From: Perkinsela sp. CCAP 1560/9
Lineage: Eukaryota > Protista > Euglenozoa: Kinetoplastea
Assembly: GCA_965644495.1 (NCBI GenBank)
Contig: CBFFSA010000010.1
Coordinates: forward strand, 372,001 to 436,000
Reading direction: 5' to 3'
Length of the DNA stretch: 64,000 nucleotides
Positions within the stretch are counted from its first letter, which is position 1, and each line of letters starts with the position of its first letter. This document shows positions 100-64,000 of the stretch, in pieces. Under the pieces are notes generated by a model that saw only the letters and a list, made by a program, of their open reading frames with translations, was not told the origin of the DNA and searched no databases. The translations under genes were made by a program, and so were the position numbers.

Positions 100-460
100 A
101 TTTGCCTATTAGAGCTACAACTGTAGTAGTGTATCCAAGGACAATGTAGGAGTATAGTACAGGGAAATAACTTCTTGCCATGACGCCCTGCATGATGCCT
201 AGCCAAAGATAAGCGTGGACAAGAAAGAAGCTGGGAGGGAAGTACTCACTTCACGGGAGTGGCTGGGAGGGGTCAAGGGATCGAGAGGCGTCCCCCGCTT
301 CAGCGAGAAATGGGGACAGTTCCAGTCTTAGTACCGGCAGGAAAAGGGCATAAAAATACAGTGTGGAAATAACGGGCATGGAATTTTGACAAAGTTACGC
401 TCGTTGCGTGGGGAAGAAATGATGAACTAAGTAGAAAAAGTACAGAAAGTCTAATATCGA
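100..460 (-). mobile_element. SINE-A-related element (shared 5' head, different 3' body)
   Basis: Minus strand reads ctgtactttttctacttag|ttcatc...ccggtactaagactggaactgtcccc...gaagcgggggacgc...ccactcccgtgaagtgagt, matching the head of the SINE at 62610-63260. Duplicated at 10075-10440. Ends approximate. Confidence 0.65.
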
Positions 461-10074: not shown

Positions 10075-10440
10075 ATTTGCCTATTAGAGCTACAACTAAA
10101 CTAGCATTAGAGCTACAACACTAGTAGTGTATCCAAGGACAATGTAGGAGTATAGTACACAGAAATAACTTGTTGCCATAACGCCCAGCATAATGCCTAG
10201 ACAAAGGTAAACGTGGACAAGAAAGAAGCTGGGAGGGAAGCACTCACTCCACGGGAGTGGCTGGGAGGGGTCAAGGGATCGAGAGGCGTCTACCGCTTCA
10301 GCAAGAAAAGGGGACAGTTCCAGTCTTAGTACCGGCAGGGAAAGGGCATGAATACTGGGCATGAAATTTTGATAACGGTACGCTCGTTGCGTGGGCAAGA
10401 AAGGATGAACTAAGCAGAAAAAGTACCGAAAGTCTAATAT
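10075..10440 (-). mobile_element. SINE-A-related element, duplicate of 100-460
   Basis: Same head motifs; part of the segmental duplication. Confidence 0.65.
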
Positions 10441-11713: not shown

Positions 11714-11737
11714 AAAGAAAGTTTCTGTACCTTGTTG
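11714..11737 (+). other. Spliced-leader exon relic (3' portion) at LINE 5' end
   Basis: aaagaaagtttctgtaccttgttg resembles the kinetoplastid SL exon 3' end (...ACAGTTTCTGTACTWTATTG). Not followed by GT. Confidence 0.8.
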
Positions 11738-11765
11738 TTTTCTTTTCCCTACCCTTTACAACGAC

Positions 11766-14700
11766 ATGTTTTGCTTACTACCAGGGAAGGGCACACACCA
11801 GGCGTCGCAGGACTCTCCTAAGAGACCACGCGACGTGTCTAACCAAAACAAAAACCTGTCCCTGAAAGGCACTCCCACAGACAGGGTTGCAAAATCTGCT
11901 ACCCGAACCGTCCAGGCTCTCATATCCCAAAAGAGCAATGAGTCCCTTACCAGCGACACAGGAGAAGCACCCCCAGCTCCATGCAAACATCCTTGTAAGG
12001 ACAAAAGCACCTGCGGACACCCCTGTTGCAAGAGGGGTGTAACGCGGCCACATATCCTGGTCACTCCTCACACAAACGAACTTCCCCCTCACCGCGTCCC
12101 CCCCACCACACAACAAACCGTTCCGGAATGCAAACACCGCTGCAAGGACAAAGCTCACTGTGAACACCCATGCTGCAAACGACACCTGGTACGCGTAGTA
12201 AAACCGGATACGTACAACAATAAGAGAAGTGACGCACCGGTGGATGCAAGAGAAGACGTAAAGGTGATCACGGCTGTGAGTGTAATGCCGGTACAACGTA
12301 GCACACCCTGTAAGCATGTCTGTAAAAACAAACAGACCTGCGGGCACCCATGTTGCAAACGTAATCTTACACCAACAACATACGAACTCACGAGCACTAC
12401 GGCGAGCGGTCAAGAATCCGGGCCCAAAGAAGCTCCAAGTACGCGACAAAGGGACGAAACGTCACCGCCATGCACCCGTGACCACGTAACACAGGATGTG
12501 AAAGTACCGAAATCAAGCAACCTACTTGGCATGGCAGCGCGAGCTGCAACACGATATCTGTTTTCAAGCCGCACTCAACCGTACGCTAACGGCACTCCCT
12601 CAACCCCGGCGGTAACCGTACGACCTCACAGCAGCACCGGACAGGAACGCTTGTCGTACACAATAGCACCCTGTCCAAAAGACGAACACGATTTACATGT
12701 ACCCCCACCCAAGGAGGTTGCTCCCCATCAAAAATCACCCACTGTTACCGTCGGTCGTGCCGTCGCATCAACTGCCTGCTCGCTTGCCAAATTCCTACTT
12801 TTCAAAGGCGTTCCATGTCAAACTCCGGACTCCCAAAGCCTCCCCAAACCTAAATCTCCAACACAACTTCAGGTCCACGCCTTAACTAGAGTATGCAAGC
12901 ATATCTGCAAGAGTAAAGATCAATGTAAGCACGTGTGTTGCAAGCAAGGCCTAGGCCCCGCCTCCGAACAAGCAGACCGTGTCGAGCCCTGTAAGCATAA
13001 ATGTAAGAACAAGGCAGGGTGCGGCCATCCTTGCTGCAAACGCACTGGCACACCGTTGACTTCGCTTGACACACCGATAAGCAAACTGGATGGGCAGGAT
13101 ACTCTACCCACCGGCCCATGTACCCTTCCCAAGAATCTCGTCACACCGTCCCTAAACACAACCACTACGACAGCTGACCGTGCCGTTGCCAGGGAACCAG
13201 CCATCCCGACTCCCAAAAACAAGGCACCGGAAAGTATCATTCTCTTGGACTCATCTTCCCCAGCACACCAACACAGTCCGCGGAATGAGAATGGCGATGA
13301 CGAAGTCCCATCCTGGGTTTTCCAACAAGCGCACAGCGTAGGTCGAATACAAAGCCCGCCGCTTGAACAAGGAAGCCTCTTACCCCCATCACAACTGGAC
13401 GCCCATTTACATTCGGATGAATCCGAGGGTCCCCAGATTCCCACACAAACTCCCGACAGCCCGTCACAGTATCTCCCGCCGCCCCAGGACCCCACGCATC
13501 CCGTAACCCATAACCGACACAAGCAACGTTTCCACTTTATCCAGTCCCGGTCAAAACCTGTCAAACTCCGCCTCGTCAACGACAACACATGGAGATATTT
13601 CCCGGATGTGCATGCAGCATGCGTAAGCCAACTTGTGCGTAGTCGTATCCCTTCCCCCCAGGGGGCTGAAGCCGCCCTGTCCAAAGCGCTCAATGGGAAA
13701 AGTGCAGCACACGACATCGTCGTAGAAACGTGTACCGTAGACGAACTTATGGAAAAGAGAGCGTGTGACTTTTTAGAAGTTAGTAGAGTAGACTCAACAA
13801 GTCACATTTCTCGCCACGCGAACTGGGTATCTCTTTTTCACGACAGCCGCCTGGAATTATACAACCACTACGCATCACCTAGCTCAATGGGTAAAGCGGT
13901 AAATAAGGTACTGAACGGGAGAGCGGTCCCTGGGTTATCGGCGTTTCGGATCGTTCTGCTCCTTCGCACCGACGACAAAGAAGAAGTACAGCCATCAAAG
14001 CCCCAAATGGTCCCAACACTTCCACCATACGAGATTATTTCGCGTGACCACGCCTCCTCCTTGAAGCGGACGCACCCATGCCAACATCGATGCATAAGTA
14101 AACTCAAATGCAGCCATCCATGCTGCAAAATCTATGGACCATCCCTCGATCAGGGAATCGAAGGAGACTCTGAGGGGAGCCCCAACGCAGGACAAGAGCA
14201 AGAACACCCCGAACTTAACCCCCCCACTTCCGCTTCCTCTCCGAGACCACTCGACGAGACGGAGTACCTTTTCCGCACGGCACGATACATCCAGGGGGGC
14301 AAGTTAAACATAAACTTGGCCGATGCGCACTGGCACGAGGTGGAACGTAGGGCCCTCCACAGATGCAACACCTTGCTCACTGTCTCTGGCGACGCACTCT
14401 CCGCCGTCCATAACGCAGAACTACTGAGTGCAATACTAGCGGTGTCGGCATATGAAGTGGCGCGAGACGTCGACTCCAGGAAGGGTTTCATTATCCGAAC
14501 GGCTCGAGGACACATAAAGGGGAAAGTCCGTCCATTAGAAAGCGAAAAAGTTGCCTTTTCCTTCTCTCGACATGTAAAACAACTACAAATGAAGCTGCGA
14601 TACACACACGGCAAGGCTCCCCGCATGGCGTTGAAACAAAAGATTAAGGAAACCAAAAAGGCGGAACGTATATACAGCGCAGAAGCCATGGCCCAAAAAC

Positions 14701-17216
14701 AGGAACTGGAAAGTCGCTGGGCACTTCAACAATTCAACCGCAATCCATGGACGGCTGCGAGTCAAACCTTGGACAAAAGGACAGAAGCAGAAAGTGTACC
14801 GGCCTATCCGACTTGCAATGTACAGAAAGTGGAAAGTGTGTTCACAACATTACTTACGGACCCCACTACAGTGCATCACTTACCACCCCACGACGTCCTC
14901 GGAAACCGTCCTCTGGCAGAAATGACCTGGGACGAACTGGCTTCAATCGACATTTCGAACGCTCTCACATCAAAGAAAAACAGCAGTGCTCCAGGCCAGG
15001 ACTCCATTACGTACCAGACTCTAAAGCGATGCCACAGCTCCCACACGCACATGGCAAACGTCTTCAACGCGCTAGTGCGCTTCAGCACATGTCCGACGTC
15101 ATGGAAAATATCCGTCACTCGCCTCATTTACAAAAAAGGGGAGCCTGACAACCCACAAAACTGGCGTCCCATCGGCCTGACTAGCGTACTAGGGAAACTC
15201 CTGCATTCCATCATCAGCCGGAAAATGACGAAATTCCTACTTGAAGCCTCTGTCATTGACCCCAAGATACAGAAAGGCTTTCTCCCCGCCATTAACGGTA
15301 CTCTCGAACATACGCAATCCCTCTCAGAGCTCCTACGCCACTACCGGAAGAACAAGTGGAACTACTGCATGGCCCAGCTAGACCTCAGTAACGCCTTTGG
15401 TTCAGTCCCCCGCAACATCATCTTTGAAGCACTGGAATGGGCGAGAATCTCCCCAAACATTATTAAATACGTCCAATGCTTATACACTGACGCAAGTACC
15501 CGCATTAAATGTTACGAAGGTCTGTCCAGCGCGATCCCAGCTAAACGAGGTGTCTTACAAGGTGACACTCTCTCTCCTACGCTCTTTCTGGTGATTATGG
15601 AGCTAGCCCTACGTTACATGGCAAAATCATTTCCCTCATTTGGATTGAACCTCCCTGGATTTCCAAAAAGCTTCCTAAAAGCGTACGCCGACGATCTCAC
15701 GGTCCTGACGAATAGTGAAAAAGAAATGCAACTGGCTGTTGAAACACTATCCACGGTACTGGGTTCGCTTGGCCTTTCCATCAACGTCAAAAAGTGCAGA
15801 GTCCAATGCATGGCGTCCAAGAAAAATGATGAACACCCCGGCTACATGACACGACGTCCTCAAATTTTCATCAAGAACGAAGCTATACCGCATATATGCG
15901 ACGAAGGAAGTACGTTTCTTGGCATGAATATTGCCCCCGGTTCTCAACAATCCCGAGCCCTTTTCACGAAAGTTAGGCCCTTATTGAAGCGATGGCTTCA
16001 TAACATTGACCAGTCGGCCCACGACCTCCCATCAAAAATTTGGATACATCAACACGCAATCATCTCTCGGCTACGCTTCACCTTTACTATACACCCATGT
16101 ATCACTCTAAACTTTATTTTACGCCTTCAGAAAATGTGTACTCACTCCCTGAAACGGTGGATCAATGCGGCTAGAACTACATGCAGCGAAGCAATCTACT
16201 CTCAGCGTGGATGGAACATCTGCAGCTTGTCCAGACTCTGGGAGGACTGTACAGCTGATCTTCTCTGTCAAATGAAGCGGTCCCGAGACCCGAACGTTAC
16301 CGCCGCACTGCAGGAAAGAATACGGGCTGAAGAACATAAGCGCAGGAAAGGCCAAATTCGACCAGCATGTGACATCACACACATACTGGACGATCGCGAT
16401 CTCGCAAAACGAACTCTTCTTGAGCTTAATGAGGACCGAATGATCAACGCACTACGCCGCAGGTCAACGTTCGCTATTCAGTGGTGGGATATAGCCTCCG
16501 AGGAAGAACAGGCGAAAGATTTCAGCGCCGCGATAAACGGATTACGTAGCACTTCCCTTAGCCGCTTCGCAACTTCTTTAATGGTACAAAACACTCTCCC
16601 TACTAGGACAATGCTGAGGACATGGGGAATTCACGGCACAGATACAGTACAATGCCGAATTTGTAAACAAGAACCGGAAACATTACGACACCTCTTATCC
16701 TCGTGCAAGGTATCACTAGAACAGGGACGTTACACATATCGCCACGATTGTGTACTCTCCACCTTTGCAAACGCGATACTCTCTTCCCCCCATACCGCAG
16801 AGGCACATTTTGATCTCCCACACCTACGTCAACTACCCGCATGGTGGTCCGACCTGGAAACACAGCTTCGCCCAGATGGAATCGTCAAACTCAACGACGG
16901 AACTGAATTTATCGTTGAGTTGACGATGCCCTGGGAGGAAAACGTACACGAAGCCCACTGCCGAAAAGTAGAAAAGTACATAAATATTCTACACCGACGA
17001 AAGATAAGGTACTCAGACTGCCACTTGATATGCTTTGAAGTTGGAGCTAGAGGTCTCCCTTCTACGACGCTGCGTCACATCAACCGTCTCTTTTTGGGTG
17101 ACAAGGCACTCTCAGATAAGTGCCGTGTCGAAGTCATCCGAACGGCGATCCGGAGCAGCTTTCAACTCTGGCTGAAAAGGGAATCCCCTTTATGGGACAA
17201 CCAAAGCTTTGGTTAG
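11766..17216 (+). CDS. Retrotransposon polyprotein, 1816 aa: 6 Cys/His motifs, RT, CCHC knuckle, restriction-like endonuclease
   Basis: APGQDSI, NWRPIGL, QKGF, LDLSNAFGSV, GVLQGDTLSP, AYADD; CRIC...HLLSSC, GRYTYRHDCVL, RPDG, ELTMPWE, KVEKY, EVGARG. Confidence 0.97.
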   Translation: MFCLLPGKGTHQASQDSPKRPRDVSNQNKNLSLKGTPTDRVAKSATRTVQALISQKSNESLTSDTGEAPPAPCKHPCKDKSTCGHPCCKRGVTRPHILVTPHTNELPPHRVPPTTQQTVPECKHRCKDKAHCEHPCCKRHLVRVVKPDTYNNKRSDAPVDAREDVKVITAVSVMPVQRSTPCKHVCKNKQTCGHPCCKRNLTPTTYELTSTTASGQESGPKEAPSTRQRDETSPPCTRDHVTQDVKVPKSSNLLGMAARAATRYLFSSRTQPYANGTPSTPAVTVRPHSSTGQERLSYTIAPCPKDEHDLHVPPPKEVAPHQKSPTVTVGRAVASTACSLAKFLLFKGVPCQTPDSQSLPKPKSPTQLQVHALTRVCKHICKSKDQCKHVCCKQGLGPASEQADRVEPCKHKCKNKAGCGHPCCKRTGTPLTSLDTPISKLDGQDTLPTGPCTLPKNLVTPSLNTTTTTADRAVAREPAIPTPKNKAPESIILLDSSSPAHQHSPRNENGDDEVPSWVFQQAHSVGRIQSPPLEQGSLLPPSQLDAHLHSDESEGPQIPTQTPDSPSQYLPPPQDPTHPVTHNRHKQRFHFIQSRSKPVKLRLVNDNTWRYFPDVHAACVSQLVRSRIPSPQGAEAALSKALNGKSAAHDIVVETCTVDELMEKRACDFLEVSRVDSTSHISRHANWVSLFHDSRLELYNHYASPSSMGKAVNKVLNGRAVPGLSAFRIVLLLRTDDKEEVQPSKPQMVPTLPPYEIISRDHASSLKRTHPCQHRCISKLKCSHPCCKIYGPSLDQGIEGDSEGSPNAGQEQEHPELNPPTSASSPRPLDETEYLFRTARYIQGGKLNINLADAHWHEVERRALHRCNTLLTVSGDALSAVHNAELLSAILAVSAYEVARDVDSRKGFIIRTARGHIKGKVRPLESEKVAFSFSRHVKQLQMKLRYTHGKAPRMALKQKIKETKKAERIYSAEAMAQKQELESRWALQQFNRNPWTAASQTLDKRTEAESVPAYPTCNVQKVESVFTTLLTDPTTVHHLPPHDVLGNRPLAEMTWDELASIDISNALTSKKNSSAPGQDSITYQTLKRCHSSHTHMANVFNALVRFSTCPTSWKISVTRLIYKKGEPDNPQNWRPIGLTSVLGKLLHSIISRKMTKFLLEASVIDPKIQKGFLPAINGTLEHTQSLSELLRHYRKNKWNYCMAQLDLSNAFGSVPRNIIFEALEWARISPNIIKYVQCLYTDASTRIKCYEGLSSAIPAKRGVLQGDTLSPTLFLVIMELALRYMAKSFPSFGLNLPGFPKSFLKAYADDLTVLTNSEKEMQLAVETLSTVLGSLGLSINVKKCRVQCMASKKNDEHPGYMTRRPQIFIKNEAIPHICDEGSTFLGMNIAPGSQQSRALFTKVRPLLKRWLHNIDQSAHDLPSKIWIHQHAIISRLRFTFTIHPCITLNFILRLQKMCTHSLKRWINAARTTCSEAIYSQRGWNICSLSRLWEDCTADLLCQMKRSRDPNVTAALQERIRAEEHKRRKGQIRPACDITHILDDRDLAKRTLLELNEDRMINALRRRSTFAIQWWDIASEEEQAKDFSAAINGLRSTSLSRFATSLMVQNTLPTRTMLRTWGIHGTDTVQCRICKQEPETLRHLLSSCKVSLEQGRYTYRHDCVLSTFANAILSSPHTAEAHFDLPHLRQLPAWWSDLETQLRPDGIVKLNDGTEFIVELTMPWEENVHEAHCRKVEKYINILHRRKIRYSDCHLICFEVGARGLPSTTLRHINRLFLGDKALSDKCRVEVIRTAIRSSFQLWLKRESPLWDNQSFG

Positions 17217-17301
17217 CAAATGGTCTAGCAGGCGACGTCATATGCGTACGTCCTGTTAGACTTTATTACTCTACAGGTAATGCCCTGTATAGATATAAAT
17301 A

Positions 17302-22559: not shown

Positions 22560-24350
22560 GCAGATTATCTAACCGCGCTAGGCTACCACCCTTGAATAGC
22601 GGCCTGCACCATCTGCGCATTACCTTTTTGGGTGGTCGCCCCCATGGCCATCAGCAAATGTCTGAAACAACCCGCGGGATCCTCCTTTTGAGTACCCGCG
22701 ACCTTCCGTAGGAACTTTAATGTGTGGGTTCTCTCTACGCCTCGCGGAAGGCAAGAAGACCTCAACCCATGCCCCGAAAGTCGTAAAAGCCAGGTTTACC
22801 CGTCCCTCAGGGAACCAGCTCCCTTACCCGGCTTACACCTCTTGGGTAAGCCGTGTTGACGTACAGTTCGTCGACGCAGCGTGTTGGCAACAGCACGTTG
22901 GTGCCGCCTTGGACAAGCGGAAACTGGTAGAGGACGTCGACCTCGGAACTTCCAAATCTGTCTGTGAAGGGTCTGGATTGCCAGTGACCATCCGGAGCAA
23001 TCCGGAATGATTTGGATTTTTTATTTTTACCCGTCCAGGGTTAGGAGGTTGCGGAAGGCATCCTTGACCAATTTATGTCGGGATGCCTGTGTACGGCCTT
23101 TACCCCGTTTGCAGTCCAGAGCGTGGACTGCCAACTCTTTATTACAGGGAAAGAGATCCCACACGCGCACTGGGCTGTGGGGGAAGACACCGGCGCCATG
23201 AAGTAGCGCAGCCTTGCCGCGGTCTCCCACTCCACGTCCCGGATGTAGTCCCAAGCCCATTTCCGTAAACATGTCCGTAAAACGTCGGCTACATCGGTTG
23301 CGTACGCCCCTAACAGTTTCAAGCCATGAGGAGAGTGTATAGTCAGGCCATGAGGGGAGCGGATACGGGTACCGCGGAAGGGCTCAAAGCCCTCCGGCTC
23401 CCTTGTCGCTACAACGCATTTGGCGCTGTTAAGTTTAAGCCCTATCCTTTTTGTTTACTTTTCTAGCCCAGTCAGGGTTTTCTCGCAAAGGGAGGGGGAG
23501 CGCCAAGATAACGTCGTCCAGATAAGCCCAGGGGGGCACATCTGGCTTGAATTCTGCCGCCACCTCGTCTAAACACTTCTGAATGCCAATGGAGAAAAGA
23601 ATGGGTGAGTGGTGGTCCCCTTGTCTTACCCCCGTGGTGCTTTTATTAGCCACGTTATTGCCCAGGTGGGTTTTACTGGGGGGTCCGTAGGAGAAGGATA
23701 CGACCCCTGCAATGTCGGCAAACATGTTGCTCCAACATACCGGCACTAAAAACGAGGATCGTGTGATCATCACACAGCAGCACTGATGCTGTTGAACGCG
23801 CTCTCTAGGTCAGCTGCACCTATGACTCCGGCTTCCGAGTTATTAAAGGTGTTTCTGGCGTTGGAAATCACGAATTCGCAACCGAGAGAATGTTTAGCTC
23901 CAAATTGCAAGCCATTGAAAAAGGAAGGCAGGGCTTCGCTAATACGCTCTAGATCTAGCCATCTTGTCAATTTCGTAAAAAACTCGCCCATGGCGATTGG
24001 GCACGCATAGATGAGGAGTGACCGCTCGGGGCGCCCGGCTTCGCGAAGAGTTTGAGCTTCGAAGCCGCCAGGATGTCCCTCAGGCACGTAGGGAGAGTGC
24101 TTGTGAAAATACCTTTGACCACCCACGTGATGCACTCTCTGGGGTCCTCCTCTCCCAGGATACAAGCAGCTAGCTCCTTTGTCCAGCCCGTGGGGCCCGG
24201 CGCTCTGAGCAGGGCTATACGTTTGGCCTTCCTCACCACGTCGTCCGGGGAGGGGAGGACTGGCCTCGAGAGCATTTCTGAGACTTCCTTTTCTGTCGGA
24301 AGGCCAAGCGTTTGAGGGCCCGCGCCCGAATACCGTGTGGGCGGCTGATA
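22560..24350 (-). mobile_element. Decayed CRE-clade (SLACS/CZAR/CRE-like) non-LTR retrotransposon, RT to 3' end
   Basis: Frameshifted motifs APGPTGW, PIAMGEFFTKL, QFGA, ADLESAFNSIS, STTGVRQGD..SPILF, AYLDD, KLLGA, HALDC..RH, MGATTQKGNA. Confidence 0.85.
22803..23028 (+). mobile_element. SINE-B, 5'-truncated copy nested in CRE element
   Basis: Near-identical to 25527-25750 (minus). Ends tccgga-gcaa-tccggaatgatttggattttt. Confidence 0.85.
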
Positions 24351-24449: not shown

Positions 24450-25200
24450 TGAGTAGTTGTGCTTTGCGAGATTTGACGTATGTCGTATTGGTTCCAAAAG
24501 CCACATTTGTTGGTCTTCGTGTGATTCATTGGCCGTTTGGGTGGGGCTTTGCCATAAGCTCTTGCTGCTACCGGCAGGGCCAGCCACCAGCGAACGAAAA
24601 TCTCGCTTTTGACAATTCCTCTACAAATGATCGGGCGAACGGCACCCAAAACACATTCCTGGTCGTCGATATGGCTCAGGCGCGCGAGCTGGTGTAACTT
24701 GCGGAGTAAAGGAACGCTGCGATCGTGGTGTATGCTCAAGTTAAATGCTTTTGTCTTTCCGCCAACTGATCACTTACATGGTGGTAGAATTTATCGTTGG
24801 GACGCACAACAAGGTACGGATTGTGGCGCGAGGTCTTGGTGTTCCGTCCCTACCATATGACGATCCTTTCCGGCCTCACTTTGCAGAATCTGTCTCGCGT
24901 GAGGGCTACTGTTTCCGTCCAACGACTTGCTGCCTTCCAGCAGAGCACCACGGTAAGACCTTCGCTGCGGGGCAAGCTCTTCCACAACTTGTTCAGAGTT
25001 CCTGGGGTTAAAGGCAACATCTGACGCATCGGTACTGCCGCTCCGGCCGCCGCAAGTGACTTTATGTAGAACTTGAGCCGATTGGTCTGTGTCCCGCCAA
25101 GGTTTAACAGTGTAGCGCAGTGCGCCAGGAAGGATATACGGATTTGTCGGACGCGGATTATATTCCCATCGTACATGCTACAAATGACTTACATAGTTCA
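24450..25200 (-). mobile_element. TATE-like tyrosine-recombinase remnant
   Basis: LAAAGAAVPMRQMLPL...CWKAASRWTETVALT...PERIVIW*GRNTKTSRHNPY resembles the kinetoplastid TATE recombinase; interrupted by stops. Confidence 0.7.
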
Positions 25201-25526
25201 TGATACAGCATGGCCAGGGCCATGGATGCATGCTGGTAAATGGAGTCATGATTCATGATGCATCATGGGCATCGGGGTCCCACAGAATCCGCCACGGCTG
25301 GTGAGCAAGAGAGGTGCATGGAATATCCGCTAGAACACGCATACAACGTGTTTGCTCGCTGTGTGGGAGACTTCCAGCGTTTGGAAGCCTCCTGCGCGCA
25401 GAAGTACCGGTGCCGCGCGATGGGGAAGGCACGCCGCGTGGTCCCGTAGAAGGGTCCTGCAGCGCATGGGGACTCGGAACCGTGTTCCGAGCAGGGTGGT
25501 GGGAGATGAAGAAAGGGAGGCACACC

Positions 25527-25920
25527 AAAAAAAATCCAAATCATTCCGGATTGCTCCGGATGGTCACTGGCAAGCCAGACTCTTCACAGACAGATTTGGA
25601 AGTTCCGAGGCCGACGTCCTCTACCAGATTCCGCTTGTCCAAGGCGGCACCAACGTGCTGTTACCAGCACGCTGCGTCGACGAACTGTACGTCAACACGG
25701 CTTACTCCCAAGAGGTGTAAGCCGGGTAAGGGAGCTGGTTCCCTGAGGGGAGGGTCCGGGACGGTCCTCCGAGTACTGGGCCTAGTCGGTTATCAGCCCA
25801 GCCTCTTAGAGTGAATATTGCCGGGAATATTGCGATGAGCGGGTTTGAACTCGCCGTCTGAGCACCATGTGCATCAAGCTTTGAATTCTTGCCACTCCGC
25901 CTTCTCCGCCACCTCCGCCT
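25527..25920 (-). mobile_element. SINE-B with tRNA-like head
   Basis: Minus strand has an A-box-like ggcggagtggcaag and a B-box-like gagttcaaacc, a body shared with 22803-23028 and 57625-57985, and an oligo-T end. Confidence 0.7.
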
Positions 25921-25929
25921 TTGGAGGCG

Positions 25930-26090
25930 CACCCCTAATTTGTGACAAGAGGGACAGTTCCTCTCCTAGCGCCATCCGGAAACGGGCATGAACATAGTGA
26001 CAATATGTCCGTTTCCGAGAGAGAAAAGATGAACTAGGAGAAAAAGTACAACAAGGTACAGGAACTGTGTCTTTGAGAAACTGTATCAAT
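25930..26090 (-). mobile_element. SINE-A head with SL relic (26049-26074) and retained splice acceptor
   Basis: attgatacagtttctc-aaagacacagttcctgtaccttgttg-tactttttctcctAG-ttcatcttttctctctcggaaacggacat... Confidence 0.85.
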
Positions 26091-32245: not shown

Positions 32246-32275
32246 CTATAAAGATACAGTTTCTGTACCTTGTTG
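32246..32275 (+). other. Spliced-leader exon relic at LINE 5' end
   Basis: ctataaagatacagtttctgtaccttgttg is the closest match in the window to the kinetoplastid SL exon. Followed by ctttg, not GT. Confidence 0.88.
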
Positions 32276-35200
32276 CTTTGTACTAAACTTATCTTTCGGA
32301 GCATGATCTCTAATGTCACACCCCCAGCTCCCCACGCGCACGACGGCCTCCCTCGAGGACCTGTCAGCGCGAAGCGACACCCCCAGAACTTTCACTTCGT
32401 CCGAAGTCGTGCGGTGCCAGTGAAGATCCGCCCCTCTGATGGCTTTTCATGGTCCTATTTTCCCGACACGCACGCCGCAGCCATCACCCTTACCGAACGA
32501 GAGTTTTTCTCAAGCACGCACACAGCAGAAGCTTCCCTCGGAAAAACCCTGAAGTCGGGAAGCAAAAGGAGCGATGGTCCGATAGTACAAACGTGTACCA
32601 CTCAAGATGTCATCGAGAACGATGCATGCGAGTACGTTGAGTACCATGAAATTGGAAACCTTAGTCGCACATTTCATCACACGAGCTGGAGCTCTGCTTA
32701 TACAGACCCCGACATGCAGCTTGACACAGAATACTCCTCCTCGAACGCGCTTGGCAAAGCCGTCACAAAGAAATTGCGCGGCGGTGACATGCCAGGCTTA
32801 CGACGATTCCGCATATCACACGTGACCCGTAAGGCCCAACCCATTGAACAACTCCAACGTTGCTCGGAGGTCACATACGACGCGCCATATAGAATCCGTG
32901 ATGCTCCCGTCAAGGTGTCAAAACTACCGCCCACTAAACCAAGTGTCCCTTGTGCCCATAAATGCCGGGACAAAGCAGCATGCCTTCACGTATGTTGCAA
33001 AGTGAAACCCGAAAGGTCTGTGCATCCTAGCGTCCCTCCTCCCTCTTCGGAAGCCGTGGCTATAGACAGTTCACTAGCTCCCGGCAGAAGGCCCTGTAAG
33101 CATACGTGCCGCGACAAGACAAATTGTTTGCACCAGTGCTGCAAAATAGGAGTCCTCATTACGGGTGCTACTGAAAATCCTCGACCAGAACGGCACCTCG
33201 GGGAGTCATCACTAACACGGTCACATAGTCCACATCGATAGAAACCGATCCGCAAGTCTCGACAGAGGCCATACCGAGCGAAGAGGCCCAGTATGAGGAT
33301 CTGCCAACCGGTCATCCGCCGTCGTCCGCCATAATATCAGCAAACACGGCCAACTATCACCCGTGTCGGCACATACAATAAGTATGTATGCAGCAATAAA
33401 ACTCAGTGCAAACACCAATGTTGCAAGACAGGGGTCATGATCGTCGAAGAAAACGGTCAGAATCGAATATGGTCACTCAGGAATTTGTTTACGAGGACAT
33501 CTCCTGCCGATGCTAGCATAATATCACCACAGAATCACCCTAGCTGGCCATCCGAGACAGGAAACTTGAGCGGTACGCAGGCTGTAAACCACGAACTCTC
33601 TCATACACGCACTTCCCCGGAACCTCATGTTAGTAGAGATGGCAATATCCCCCCTGAATCAGTCCCTCGCCGTAATTGCGCACATAAATGTAAAGACAAA
33701 ACCAAATGTAAGCATTCATGTTGTCAAAAAGGAGTTCTCCTCAAAGCTGGCGAAATCGCATACTCTGCCATAAGCTGGACGGCGAAAAATATTCTATTCC
33801 CTGCGCTTGGTGATGCCGAACGCGCTGCAGTTTCTTCACAAGCTTCGGAACCGCCCGCCCCAGTCGTGACACCCCGCCTACCAGTTCGCACCAACTCCCT
33901 GCCCCGCACGAGTCCACTGTCCAGCCCTCTACGACATTTCCCACCAGCCCACGAGACGCAACCGGATTCCTCACCTTCTGTACCACGTATGGAATCCGTA
34001 GCAGAACCCGCGCCTTTGCCTTTGCCTTTACCTTTACCTCCCCCACCGGAAGTAAATCGCAGACGCACGACACTGCAGAGGATCCCTCGATCCCAGCACG
34101 CCCCAGCCCCAACCATTCATCCCATTCCTGACCTGCAGAATCTTCTCGAAACATTTGACACAATAACGGGAGGACGAGTTCTGGTACGTTTTACAGAGGA
34201 ACAGTGGGGCAATAGTATTGCGAAAATTGAGGAACGTTGCAACTTGTACGTGCACCCAGCGCGAAACGATGAGGATGCCCTGTCTCAAGCTAAAACATTA
34301 TCCGCGATCCTCGCCGTAACCGTCTTTGAAGCCGCACGGGAGAGCGACCCGACACACCGCTTTCTCCTGCGAACCAGAGCTGGCAGAGCCAGAAGAAACT
34401 CACGGCCCTTGGCCATCGAACGTACCACGAAGAGGCTTCGCACACATGTTCGTCAACTCAAACGTGCACTTACCTTCATGAAGGGGGCCGCGAGAAACAA
34501 GCAGCGAGGAGAAATTAAGGAAGCAGAGAAAGCGTTGAAGTTGTACGTGGAGGAAGCCAATCTACAGAAGAGGGAAATCGATCGACGATGGGCATTAACT
34601 CGGTTCCAGAGAAACCCGTGGACAGCTGCGGGCGAATGCCTAGATCGCACTGACCCAATCCAGGGACCCGAGACGTCTTACCCTACAGTACCTCTTCAAG
34701 AGGTTGAGAACTTCGCGGCATCATTGTCAAAACCTGAAGAGAATCACAGCATACCCCCCGCCGAGTTCTTCGGACCACGGCCTGACATCGACATGCCATG
34801 GTCGGATATTGACGCCGAAATGATAGCATCTGCTGTATCTTCCAAGCGCTCGGGCGCTGCTCCTGGATCAGACACTGTATCAAACGCTCTACTCAAGCGT
34901 TGTAGCCCTATCTTTGTCCACATAGCTCAAGTATTCAATGATATCCTTAAATTCGGGGTTTGCCCCCCCACCTGGAAATCTGCCGTAACTCGCCTCATAC
35001 ACAAAGGAGGTCCTACATCAACTATGGAGAATTGGCGGCCGATAAGCTTAACTAGTTGCATAAGGAAACTTTTCCATTCAATCCTGAGCCACCGAATCCT
35101 TCAACATTCCTTGGATTCTCATGCGCTCGATACATCAGTACAAAAAGGATTTCTACCACACATGAATGGGACCGTCGAGCATACACAAGTCTTATGCGAG

Positions 35201-35910
35201 CTCCTTGAACACCAACGACGTCACAAACGGCAATACTTACTGGCACAGTTCGATATCAAGAACGCTTTCGGATCTATCCCCCACGCAGTACTGTTACAAT
35301 CCCTAAAATGGGCCCGTGTCTCCCCAATTCTAATTAACTATATCAGCGCGCAGTATAAAGGAGCATCTATTCAAATCAAGTGTGCTGAAGGCCTTACGAA
35401 GTCGATCGAGATCGGCCGTGGAGTATTACAAGGAGATACACTGTCGCCGATCTTATTCAACTTGGCAATGGAATTGGTTCTTCGCTTCATCCGTTCAAGT
35501 TGCCCACAGTACGGAATCACTTGGGATGGAAAGGAAACCTTTCTGAAGGCCTTTGCTGACGACCTCAGTATACTCACGAACACACCAAAGGAAATGCAAA
35601 TTGCCACGAACGTACTGGTCAAAGTTCTAGGCGACATCGGAATGAAATTGAACGCAAAGAAATGTTGGATTCAACACATGGCAATGACTCAAGACTCAGG
35701 CTACATGACAAGACGACCGCAGATAATGATTGACGCAACACCTATTCCTCAAATATGCGATAATGGTAGCACATTCCTGGGTATGACTCTCGCACCTGGT
35801 GCCCAGCATGGTAAAATTCTGTTCCTAAAGCTACGCAATCGACTCCGTACCTGGTTACGCAACATATCTTCCAGCGCCCACGACCTACCCGCCCGACTCT
35901 GGATATACAA

Positions 35911-36813
35911 ATTTTCTTTTTTAGGCTCTTCGTTAAACGCGGTGGTTGCTTTCAACTTAGAAGTCACTCATGCTGCGCGCTTCGCGTTGAAAACTACCGC
36001 CGCGTTTAACGAAGAGCCTAAAAAAGAAAATTTAACCTGGAAAACGGAAAGATTATAGCCAAAAATAGCCGAATTTCGGGTACAAATGGGGTCATTTTCG
36101 CATATTTTTGCTCTCAGAGCACTAAATCCGACATTTGCGCGTGGGAAATCACTCGCAGGCATGAATGAAAGCCTACCGAACGTATTCGGTAAAGAATACG
36201 ACTCCAACCATACCATTCTTTCGACACAAAAATGCCCCTTTAGGTCCGAAAAATACTTTTTCACCTTTTTTAGTCAAAAATGTGTCATTTTGAGGGGCGC
36301 ACCACGGTTCGAAGAAGTGATACCTTGCGAAAACAACTGCGTAGAAAGCTAGTGTAGGTCCCAAACTATCAAAATACAATAGGGGAAACGATTTTGGAAA
36401 AATATTTTTTTTGTCATTTTTTTCGCCAAGTTGAATTTTTTTTCAAAAAAATTTTTCCGAAAAAATCCGAACTTGGCGGACCCGTCATGCGGATACGCGG
36501 GGGGGTCACCCCCGGGTAGGGGGGTGGAAAATACGCGCCAAGACCCCGGCTACCCTTTCTGCGGTTTTTTTTCGAAAACTAATTTTTTCGAAAAAATTTG
36601 CTCGACCATGCCCCCCCCCCCTGGACCCCCCCTCTGGACCCCCCCCATGGACCCCCCATTTTTTTCAAATTTTTTTTTCAGTTTTGGTCCACCGGAGCCC
36701 CCTTTTATATTTTTTTCTTCTATTATATTACTGTGTTCCTCTTTATATTTTCACTGTTTTTGTTCACTTTTTTTTCAATAATCGAGTGTAGAGCGGTAGT
36801 TTTACAACCACCG
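35911..36813. mobile_element. Non-coding insertion with terminal fold-back inside LINE copy 2
   Basis: RT frame WIY|..|NNGIISRLR is split, with caa repeated at both junctions. ~125 bp palindrome at the left end. Confidence 0.75.
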
Positions 36814-57624: not shown

Positions 57625-57990
57625 CAAAATCCAAATCAGTCCGGATTTCCCCGGACGGGCACTGGCAAGCCACACCCTTCACAGACAGATTTGGAAGTTC
57701 CGAGGCAGATGTCCTCTTCCATGTCAGGTGTTATGCGATAAGCGAGAATCGAACTCGCCGTCTAAGCACCATGTACTCCATTCTTGCCATTCGCTCCCTA
57801 CTACCCTTGTGCCCCCCTACCCTAGAGCCCGCTGAAATAGGTTCGGAAATCTTTACGGCTAATTCGAACCCCGCTCATCGTATAATACCCGGCGGCCTCA
57901 CTCTAAGAGGGCTGGGCCGAGATCCGACCAGGCCTGGTACTGGAAGGACTGTCCCGGACCTTCCCCTCAGGGAACCAGCTCCCTCAAGCT
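57625..57990. mobile_element. Two rearranged SINE-B fragments in opposite orientation
   Basis: 57625-57800 (minus) carries the tRNA-like head joined to the 3' end; 57862-57985 (plus) carries the B-box and body. Confidence 0.7.
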
Positions 57991-61009: not shown

Positions 61010-64000
61010 GGTTGTGCCGCAAAAGTACTGGAGCTCACATTCTGAAATCGGGGCGACCCGATACCGGAGGCCGGCTGCCTTTTCCAACTCGGCGTCCCGC
61101 ATGTAGTAGGACGGCTTGATCGATTTTGAGATTTCTGAGAATTTGCCACTATAGTGACCTTTAGTGACCGGGATACTGGGAATTAGGCCTCCATCTTGGC
61201 TATGGCGCCATGGATCCTGAAGGCGAAAATTCCCTAGGCGATTCCCTATGGCGAAAGGGATTGGGGTCGTGGTTTGCTTGGTGTCGACTTGATTTACCCT
61301 CCGGGAGCTCATAATGGATGTGCCTCCTCCCAGAGGTTGCTAGTCTTCCCACTTTTCTTTCTCCTCGAAACCGAGAAGTTTCGGGTCTCCCTTTAGGGCC
61401 CGGAAGAGAGCTTACCGCGAGATGCTATTGAAAGCATTTTCAAGGTCTGCAGCCACAATGACAACCTCCGGTCTGTCTCGAAAATGCTGTCGGGCATTCT
61501 GTAAATGCTTAGACGATGTGCTCACACCGTTGAGTATACACGTTGTATTGGGATCCAAACTGTATCCCTTGAAATTGTGGACAATGTGTTTGCAGCCCTG
61601 AGTGTATTGCGCTCCGAATTGGGGAGGAAGGTCCCCCCTGTTGGATGCAGGCGTTCCGCCTGTTCGAGGGCAGCCGTGGCGTTGGCCGGGGGATCTTGCG
61701 GCCGCCCTCGAGAAAGCTCCCGCCCTTACGAGCTCCTCCGCTCGTTTTATTGCTGACATGGGGGATCTATTTTCCGCGGTGGGGGTCGGAGCCAAGGTTT
61801 CCGACCGCTCGAGGTGGGGACGCATACGAAATTCGCGTGCTAGATGTCGTTGTGACAGCGTATCCTCAGGGAAGAAGAGGAAGCGTTTGACTACGAGGAG
61901 GAGGAGGAGGAGGTTCCATGCAATTACGATTCTCTCCTCTTGCGATTTGAAGTGGGAGTTGTGACAAACGCTAGCCACGTACTCCCGCCAGGCGGGGCAT
62001 TGCACCTCATACAAATATATAATTTTCGCAAGGACTCCCTCCCCAATAGCTCCGCCAGACTTTCGGGGAAGGGGGCTTATCCTAGCTCCTCGGTTTGAGC
62101 GACTTGGGTTTGTGGGTTCGCCTCCTATCGGGGGCATACAAATGTATGTCTTGGACTGAGTCTCCGTCCCGGGCCGTAGTGTGGGGAGGGCTGGCGACGT
62201 TGGGCGCGGTCGCAATGCCCTCCAAGATCGTCTCGCTGGCCAGTGGGGTGGCCCGCCCTTGGAGGGGGATTTCTATGGCGGCGTCCCGGGTTGGCTTCAA
62301 TGTAGCCCCTGCGCAGGTTGCACTTGATTATATGGGCGGACCGTCCTGTTTCGCTGATGAGGGATTCGGAAGATAAGAAGCTCCATAAAATCCCGTCCTC
62401 GTATTCCTTGGGCTTCCAAGCTACGGTTAGGATATCGAGAATTCCTATTTGTTTGCTGAGGAAGGCAGGGATAACATGTGCGGCTCCTATGCCCGGCGCT
62501 AAGAGGCTGCCTTGGAATGTACCGTCGTACACTCGTATTGCTTTGGTGTCGATGTATCCTGTGCTGCCTGGTGGTAGGGTCAGGCGTACAGAGATCCTTT
62601 GGGCGCATTTTGTTGTTGTTTTTTCATGCACTTATAGTGCAGAGATTTGCCTCACTACATGTCCTTACCCCGCATACGACGGGTGGATCACGTGAGAGTT
62701 CGCCTTCGCCTGTGGCAAGAGGGTGCAGAGAGCTGGCGTCCCAGGTGCAGAGAGCTCGGTTGTCATGTGCAGGTGCAGAGAGCCGGATGCGTAATCCCCA
62801 TATTACAGTTTCGGGGGCAATCCGGGTGAAGAGAGCTGCGACAGAGCCGAGGTGCGGAGAGCTGGGTGACCGCCAGGTGCGGAGAGCCGGAAGTCGTAGC
62901 GAAGGACACGTCTAGTGGTCCTCAAGGGAGGCCACCGTGACGCATTGCCTCCTCGGAAAGGTAGACACGAGAAAGAAAAGCCGAGAGAGGGAAGCACACT
63001 CACTCCAGGAGAGTGAGTCGGGGAGGGGCGAAGGGTGAAAGGCGCGTCCCCTGCTTCAACGAAAAGAGGGACAGTCCCGACCTTAGTGCCGGGGAGGGGT
63101 GATGGGGTAGAAGCGCGTCCCCTACTTCGCCGAGAAAGAGGAACAGTTTCAGCCTTAGTGCCGGCCGGCAACGGGCATATGAACAGTTAGACTATGCCCG
63201 TTGCCGGGGAAAGAAAGGATGAACAACAAGGTACAGAAACTGTATCTTGTACAGAAACTCTCCCGATCTGTAATGTGGGTCACTTCCCCAGATGTGTCCT
63301 TGAGGAGTAGGCTCTCGTCGGGCACCCCAATGGTATACCCCACGATCCCCAGGATGTCTGAAAAGGAGGTTGAAGCTTCGCAAGGAACTCGAATTCGTCC
63401 GGCCCGTTCGGGGCCAAGGTCTAGGGTAATGAGTATACCTTCGCCCCGTAATCCAGGGGGCTGCCCTCCTCGGGCGCGTAAATTGGCGCGAAGCTATGCG
63501 GGTGTGATCCTGGATCTGGTCCCGGTGTAGGGTTAAAGTGGAAGGCAGGGGTGTGGAAGTGGTGCTGTGGAGGTAGAGAAGTGGTGCTGTGGAGGCCATG
63601 GAGGATTTGCTTCGAGAGTGGGGAATCCTGCTGTAGGGAGTTGCGCTGCCACGAAGAAACATTCTTTGAAGAGGCTCAGGAACTCCGACCAGCCTTCTCG
63701 TTTGAGGGCGTAGGCGCCCCGGGCATGACTTCCCAAAAGTTCGTACAATGCTTTCCGAGTGCGCTTCGGGGCGTGTACGTTTAGGATGTGGGCCTGCAGG
63801 CCTATGAGGTGTTGATGTGCGGCTCCCCAGAATGTCTGAAAAAGAGGTTAATGCGTCACATGCAGACCAGTTGGGTAGCCGTTGGGGCTTTCCCTAACGC
63901 GGCCTCACAGAGGTTGCGTGGGGCTGCTCGTTGGCTTACATGCCCTGGGGTCGGCCCTGTAGGGCGTTCTTCACCTTGGCCTGCATGCCCTCGGCCTTGT
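61010..64000 (-). mobile_element. Decayed CRE-like LINE (N-terminus to partial RT)
   Basis: AIKRAEELVRAGAFSRAA, PPQFGAQYTQGC, AADLENAFNSISR, PWRHSQDGGL; homologous to 22560-24350. Confidence 0.75.
62610..63260 (-). mobile_element. SINE-A, full-length copy beginning with SL relic (63224-63248)
   Basis: gagtttctgtac-aagatacagtttctgtaccttgttg-ttcatcc...; ends aaatctctgcactataagtgcatga-aaaaacaacaac. Confidence 0.92.

What the first reader, a model, noticed from the sequence alone, without database searches (positions are those of the whole stretch)
26020..26090. Fossil of iterative trans-splicing: one SINE keeps the acceptor, its sister has SL joined at that AG
The 26 kb copy reads SL-tactttttctcctAG|ttcatcttttc, whereas the 63 kb copy reads SL|ttcatcctttc. 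The 15 nt missing are precisely a pyrimidine tract plus AG, and the copies at ~430 and ~10415 also retain it. This is what re-splicing at the next downstream AG followed by re-integration would produce. It predicts stepwise 5' erosion of the family at each cycle, comparable to relict SLs in recycled dinoflagellate genes.
Basis: partly seen in the sequence, partly recalled or inferred. Interest (0 to 1): 0.88.

Follow-up and report, generated by a model that had tools for sequence, protein, structure and literature searches.

The report
Re-spliced leader heads on kinetoplastid SINEs
In an early-branching kinetoplastid, mobile elements re-enter the genome carrying the spliced leader that caps mRNAs, and their junctions show the leader being added again to copies that already had one, as known in dinoflagellates, but the element family is not being eroded.

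Summary
Observation largely confirmed. The leader is real: it matches a 38-nt exon in tandem SL RNA genes beside 5S rRNA, and about 550 copies lie dispersed in this prokinetoplastid-like genome. In the SINE-like family, 87 copies read SL|GTAC-pyrimidines-AG. Of 19 shortened copies, 15 join the SL exactly behind that AG, in at least four subfamilies, so this is no chance deletion. No leaderless master with an upstream AG was found. Tandem leaders elsewhere (new SL joined inside an old SL, some triple) support repeated splicing and re-integration.

Corrections: the 26 kb and 63 kb copies are different subfamilies (68% alike). The 430 and 10415 copies are one duplicated locus lacking the SL 3' end. 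Stepwise erosion is not seen: short copies are scattered tips on the tree and none is joined further in. The SL stays ten times more conserved than the body, and the commonest tandem junction follows UG, not AG (29 versus 11). I infer the old leader's own end is normally re-spliced. No RNA covered the element. The scan noted SL-headed elements before, on other DNA of this genome.

The parts
26049..26074 (-). Retro-integrated SL exon, nt 13-38 of 38, two mismatches; head of the 26 kb element
26076..26087 (-). Extra SL fragment nt 16-27, incomplete at its 3' end: a 5' junction stutter, not a relict from splicing
26034..26048 (-). 15-nt head piece (TAC, pyrimidine tract, AG); one-G-short variant of the family head
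25923..26033 (-). 5' body of SINE subfamily B, with the long hairpin
25527..25922 (.). Later insertion of a different repeat into the 26 kb element, with an 11-bp target duplication
25114..25526 (-). Remainder of the subfamily B body (92% to L002)
63224..63248 (-). Retro-integrated SL exon nt 14-38, joined directly behind the position of the AG
   Evidence: contigs of two samples agree but reach only 5 nt past the junction
63249..63259 (-). SL fragment nt 21-31, 5' junction stutter
62612..63223 (-). Body of the 63 kb element: subfamily C head, then subfamily A body (chimeric), ending in the GCATGA plus A-rich tail
223..448 (-). Older diverged copy; keeps tract and AG, lacks the SL 3' end
10221..10427 (-). 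Duplicate of the copy at 430 (same segmental duplication)
11720..17300 (+). SL-headed LINE, one ORF of 1816 aa with RT, zinc knuckle and restriction-like endonuclease motifs; its 3' end resembles that of subfamily B (76% over 76 nt); likely mobiliser
32248..36058 (+). Second SL-headed LINE of the same kind, interrupted

Best explanation
A genomic SL-headed SINE copy is transcribed (inferred: by polycistronic read-through), receives a fresh SL by trans-splicing, and is re-integrated by the RLE-type LINE. About one copy in seven was spliced at the head's own AG, giving the 63 kb form. These short copies look like end products, not founders. The long head persists because the SL is usually renewed at or next to the 3' end of the old SL (after UG or GG). 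Shown: junction spectrum, recurrence, tandem leaders, SL conservation, shared LINE tail. Inferred: transcription, the splicing step, and use of non-AG acceptors.
For: 15 of 19 shortened copies are joined exactly at the AG, in at least 4 subfamilies; the tree needs 8-10 label changes, at least 3 forced, no clustering against shuffles. No AG|GTAC or AG|TAC leaderless copy with an intact anchor. Tandem leaders with a 3'-complete outer SL start at old-SL nt 17 (2 copies), 23 (9) and 29 (29), all behind a G; nt 24-28 and 30 are unused; triple leaders exist. Stutter fragments end at scattered positions instead. SL p-distance 0.024 against 0.232 in the adjacent body, no subfamily-fixed variant. The first AG after a pyrimidine tract is the preferred acceptor (PMC6597758); GG and TG occur as minor acceptors in T. 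brucei (PMC2916883).
Against: No RNA data on the element. In T. brucei TG is only about 2% of minor sites, so a UG beating an AG 15 nt downstream by 6 to 1 is unexpected. A junction behind G or TG is also what 1-2 nt microhomology would give. The SL comparison is biased, since copies were partly selected on SL match, and selection could also conserve the SL. A leaderless master could be unassembled or have a changed anchor. Five shortening events and LINE head variants are not AG-adjacent.
Confidence: 0.55

Rival explanations
1. The long head is an inherited piece of an SL RNA gene (exon plus GTA donor), kept by selection and copied from unspliced or self-initiated RNA. Only the short copies were trans-spliced again, at the AG.
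For: The head begins GTA like the SL intron and re-forms the SL RNA stem across the donor site (predicted, -6.6 to -8.9 kcal/mol). Trypanosomatid ingi/L1Tc elements use an internal promoter and unspliced RNA (PMC8190864). No SINE head among those read extends beyond 33 nt.
Against: No further similarity to the SL intron (by eye). LINEs and other families have SL heads with no GT donor. The one-G-short form recurs in 4 subfamilies plus the 26 kb copy. No shared 5' transductions were seen.
Confidence: 0.2
2. One round only: hidden leaderless masters have two alternative acceptors, giving long and short heads with no iteration.
For: Alternative acceptors are routine in trypanosomes (PMC2916883); it explains an invariant SL and short copies as tips.
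Against: Needs a separate leaderless master for about 6 subfamilies; none found. One long SINE copy carries a tandem leader (L028/L083), so SL-headed copies do serve as templates.
Confidence: 0.1
3. The 14-17 nt GT..AG piece is removed in cis as a micro-intron.
For: The majority head starts GT and ends AG, and the product would be identical.
Against: Kinetoplastid cis-introns are three in number, the shortest with a median near 440 nt, and none was found in prokinetoplastids (PMC11613528, PMC7859406). The subfamily A piece has no internal branch adenosine. It does not explain tandem leaders.
Confidence: 0.07
4. Reverse-transcriptase slips or microhomology repair make the deletions and tandem leaders.
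For: Stutters are common at 5' junctions; the 430 copy lost a piece between two GTAC; the commonest tandem junction has the longer (TG) homology.
Against: The AG junction has only 1 nt of homology, yet takes 14 of 19 shortening events. Stutter ends are scattered while tandem outer copies end at nt 38. It may account for part of the UG class, not for the AG class.
Confidence: 0.08

Closest known systems
Relict spliced leaders in dinoflagellate retrogenes (Slamovits and Keeling 2008, as cited in PMC5585692)
   Same: SL-bearing RNA is re-integrated and spliced again, leaving tandem leaders cut at an AG inside the old SL.
   Different: Different lineage and SL; here the heads read were mostly on LINEs, SINEs and repeat families rather than on many host genes; the commonest tandem junction follows UG; a candidate mobilising LINE is present.
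CRE clade (SLACS, CZAR, CRE1/2) of trypanosomatids (PMC12278014) and NeSL of nematodes (PMC4640811)
   Same: RLE-type non-LTR elements physically tied to SL sequence.
   Different: Those insert into SL RNA genes. These are dispersed, with the SL only at the 5' end and no SL intron behind the tail; the SINE tail is GCATGA plus a short A-rich run with usually no target duplication.
ingi/L1Tc, RIME, NARTc and SIDER retroposons with the Pr77 head (PMC8190864)
   Same: LINE/SINE pairs in a kinetoplastid with a conserved 5' head.
   Different: Their head is a promoter plus ribozyme giving unspliced RNA; here the head is the SL exon itself and the LINE has RLE motifs.
HERO/NeSL-type RLE LINEs (PMC4640811)
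   Same: C-terminal zinc knuckle, RHD, PD and ELT/KY motifs seen in the window ORF; dispersed insertion as in HERO.
   Different: Clade assignment rests on motifs recalled from memory; no tree was built.

Membership tests
Kinetoplastid SL exon | Identical to the exon of a tandem SL RNA gene followed by a GT donor | tested here: met
   L033: two 297-bp units, 38-nt exon then GTATGAG, 5S rRNA adjacent
Kinetoplastid SL exon | Present at the 5' end of mRNAs | not testable with these tools
   Only contigs; the one RNA-like run does not cover the element
Relict-SL recycling (dinoflagellate type) | Genomic SL at 5' ends of dispersed retrocopies | tested here: met
   552 matches, 0 in control
Relict-SL recycling (dinoflagellate type) | Tandem leaders, the inner one cut behind an internal AG | tested here: met
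   11 of 16 tandem matches with relic start up to nt 23; but 29 more follow UG
Relict-SL recycling (dinoflagellate type) | Affects a large share of functional host genes | not tested
   No clustering; 0 deeper junctions
SINE | Short, non-coding, dispersed, 3' end shared with a LINE | tested here: met
   460-710 nt, over 100 copies, tail shared
SINE | Head from a Pol III RNA with internal A and B boxes | tested here: not met
   Head is the SL exon; no tRNA or Rfam match. Hence SINE-like
CRE/SLACS | Site-specific insertion in SL RNA genes | tested here: not met
   Unrelated flanks, no SL intron behind tails
HERO/NeSL RLE LINE | RT phylogeny | not tested
   Motifs only

The most novel reading that the evidence does not exclude
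The retroelements of this kinetoplastid need no promoter or ribozyme: each re-integrated leader supplies the pyrimidine tract and a UG acceptor at its own 3' end, so a fresh SL replaces the old one exactly at every cycle. AG-joined heads and tandem leaders are the errors of that cycle, and the genome is a countable record of acceptor choice with UG preferred.
Probability: 0.35. Interest if true: 0.82.

Novelty: new variant of a known kind. Interest (0 to 1): 0.62.

Why it matters
Leader recycling is documented in dinoflagellates; my paper searches found no report of it for a kinetoplastid, where known retroposons either target SL genes or bypass splicing with Pr77. A LINE/SINE system that travels as SL-spliced RNA offers an answer to how elements get a defined 5' end under polycistronic transcription. 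The junction counts give a DNA record of trans-splice acceptor use in an early-branching kinetoplastid and a sharp test: SL trapping should peak at the head AG and, if my inference holds, at the old SL's UG ends.

Tried and rejected
Chance 15-bp deletion: rejected by recurrence. Stepwise erosion: two searches for deeper junctions gave 0; junctions beyond those two stretches or in copies with changed anchors were not covered. Leaderless master: 0. SL 5' extent as a test of fresh versus inherited leader: uninformative, both long and short heads peak at 28 nt, as do LINE heads. Target duplications: mostly absent. The standard trypanosomatid SL start is not used here. Rfam and ARAGORN found nothing in the window. 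RRP7 homologue search was blank. The SL 3' end is not printed in any searched paper. Reads: contigs only, no RNA on the element. Loci L097-L099 come from a metagenome assembly with the same SL, probably the same organism, and are not independent.

Full report
Observation. On the minus strand the 26 kb copy has SL nt 13-38 at 26074-26049, a 15-nt piece ending in AG at 26048-26034, then the body. The 63 kb copy has SL nt 14-38 at 63248-63224 joined straight to the body. The leader is authentic: locus L033 holds two tandem 297-bp units with the same 38-nt exon followed by a GTATGAG donor, next to a 5S rRNA gene, a linkage also suggested for a prokinetoplastid (PMC7859406). The best named hit of an intronless MAP kinase from this genome is Papus PhM-4 (71%, 663 bits, against 566 or less for other named hits), so the host is probably a prokinetoplastid; this rests on one gene. 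The SL 3' half occurs 552 times in 21 Mb, control 0.

The two copies belong to different subfamilies (68% over 120 nt). The 63 kb head is 94% like L057, whose extra piece is 17 nt and starts with GT. The 26 kb copy lacks one G relative to the majority SL|GTAC head and was later split by a 396-bp insertion with an 11-bp duplication, so it is not the parent of the 63 kb copy. The 430 and 10415 copies are one duplicated locus and lack the SL 3' end.

Family test. Anchoring on the conserved hairpin, 87 copies have long heads and 19 are shortened. Fifteen of the 19 join the SL exactly behind the AG; merging duplicates gives 14 of 17 events (p about 6e-18 if independent). One copy and L008 add two more non-AG events, so 14 of 19. 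The short form occurs in at least four subfamilies; several short copies are 98-99.8% identical to long ones. On a tree of 44 bodies the label needs 8-10 changes, at least 3 forced by supported branches, and is no more clustered than shuffles (truncated, chimeric and duplicate rows were left out, and support within subfamilies is low). Homology at the junction is one base, so a chance deletion is rejected.

One round or two? A single round with alternative acceptors needs leaderless masters with an AG before GTAC. Two searches found none. Independent evidence for second rounds comes from tandem leaders in which a 3'-complete SL is joined inside an old SL: 9 copies at old nt 23 and 2 at nt 17, both behind AG (two pairs are duplicates). 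One is a SINE of this family (L028/L083) and three are triple. The control for shorter relics changed the picture: 29 copies are joined at nt 29, behind UG, 3 at nt 31, and none at nt 24-28 or 30 (not de-duplicated). Fragments from 5' junction stutter, including those ahead of both window copies, end at scattered positions (14, 19, 25, 27, 31, 32) and are a different class.

Erosion is not seen. No copy has the SL within 30 nt of the second hairpin arm or of the next conserved block, which covers the second AG of the main subfamilies. Every large subfamily is dominated by long heads. The SL part differs by 0.024 between copies against 0.232 for the next 120 nt, with no subfamily-fixed change (biased by selection on SL match). 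So the leader is either renewed each cycle or strongly selected.

Mechanism. I infer that SL-headed copies are read through, trans-spliced again and re-integrated by the LINE at 11720-17300 or its kin. That LINE has RT, a zinc knuckle and restriction-like endonuclease motifs, is itself SL-headed, and shares its 3' end with subfamily B and the GCATGA tail. SINE and LINE heads both peak at 28 nt and never exceed 33 among those read, whereas other families carry 36-38 nt, which points to a property of this RT. Exact renewal at the old SL end needs a UG acceptor; the one-G-short head (8 of 87 plus the 26 kb copy) would be GG use. In T. brucei 94% of major sites are AG, and GG and TG are 7% and 2% of minor sites (PMC2916883), so UG dominance would be unusual and is the weakest step. 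The rival is an inherited SL-RNA-like head: SL|GTAC re-forms the stem that spans the donor in the SL RNA, with only the short copies re-spliced. Cis-splicing of a 14-17 nt intron gives the same product but has no precedent in kinetoplastids (PMC11613528).

Limits. No RNA covers the element; contigs from two samples agree with the 63 kb junction but reach only 5 nt past it. Counts were tallied by hand.

Comparison and verdict. It works like relict-SL recycling in dinoflagellates (PMC5585692) and meets its sequence criteria, but in another lineage and on transposons. It is not a CRE/SLACS insertion into SL genes (PMC12278014) nor a Pr77 element (PMC8190864). I found no published kinetoplastid case in nine paper searches, which miss most subscription journals. 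Earlier readers of this scan noted SL-headed LINEs and SINEs and tandem leaders on other pieces of this genome, unchecked. New variant of a known kind; interest 0.62.

Noticed in passing
L039, L041, L042, L044, L049, L051, L092 (SL 5' ends): In 8 of 11 near-full-length retrocopies the base before CTTTAACG is T, whereas the SL gene has A; could be misreading of a methylated cap-4 nucleotide by reverse transcriptase, or an unseen SL variant.
   Followed up: partly
G000 C1 1.44-1.60 Mb, 2.28-2.49 Mb, 3.10-3.27 Mb; C4 0.37-0.68 Mb: 249 copies carry a near-complete SL and cluster in a few regions, unlike the SINE copies; suggests a second retro-machinery with A-rich target sites.
   Followed up: no
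SINE and LINE heads, e.g. window 32248: Modal SL start is nt 11, close to the position where CRE/SLACS elements cut SL genes (from memory); the SINE tail often continues with ATAAA, like SL nt 11-15.
   Followed up: partly
L033 about 1620-1720 and 1920-2015: A tRNA-like stretch with A and B box look-alikes lies divergently upstream of each SL gene; ARAGORN does not call it.
   Followed up: partly
L004, L069, L067 upstream flank: SINEs of different subfamilies sit at the same base of another repeat with terminal inverted copies, SL cut at nt 20 in all three: target preference or conversion.
   Followed up: partly
L059, L055, L098, L039, L052, L092, L093: Unrelated element families often begin with AATTATTT directly behind the SL; head variants within them are not AG-adjacent.
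   Followed up: no
window 11980-14130 and 32950-33120: LINE N-termini carry repeated C-x-H-x-C...C-x-H-x-CC motifs (six in the 1816-aa ORF) with no Pfam match.
   Followed up: no
L018, L024, L026; read laying joint 63248-62616: Head-to-tail tandem SINEs, with the tail of one copy directly before the SL of the next.
   Followed up: no
window 25527-25922, 22798-23022, 57626-57984: A second repeat with a tRNA-like start, inserted in the 26 kb element and present elsewhere in the window.
   Followed up: no
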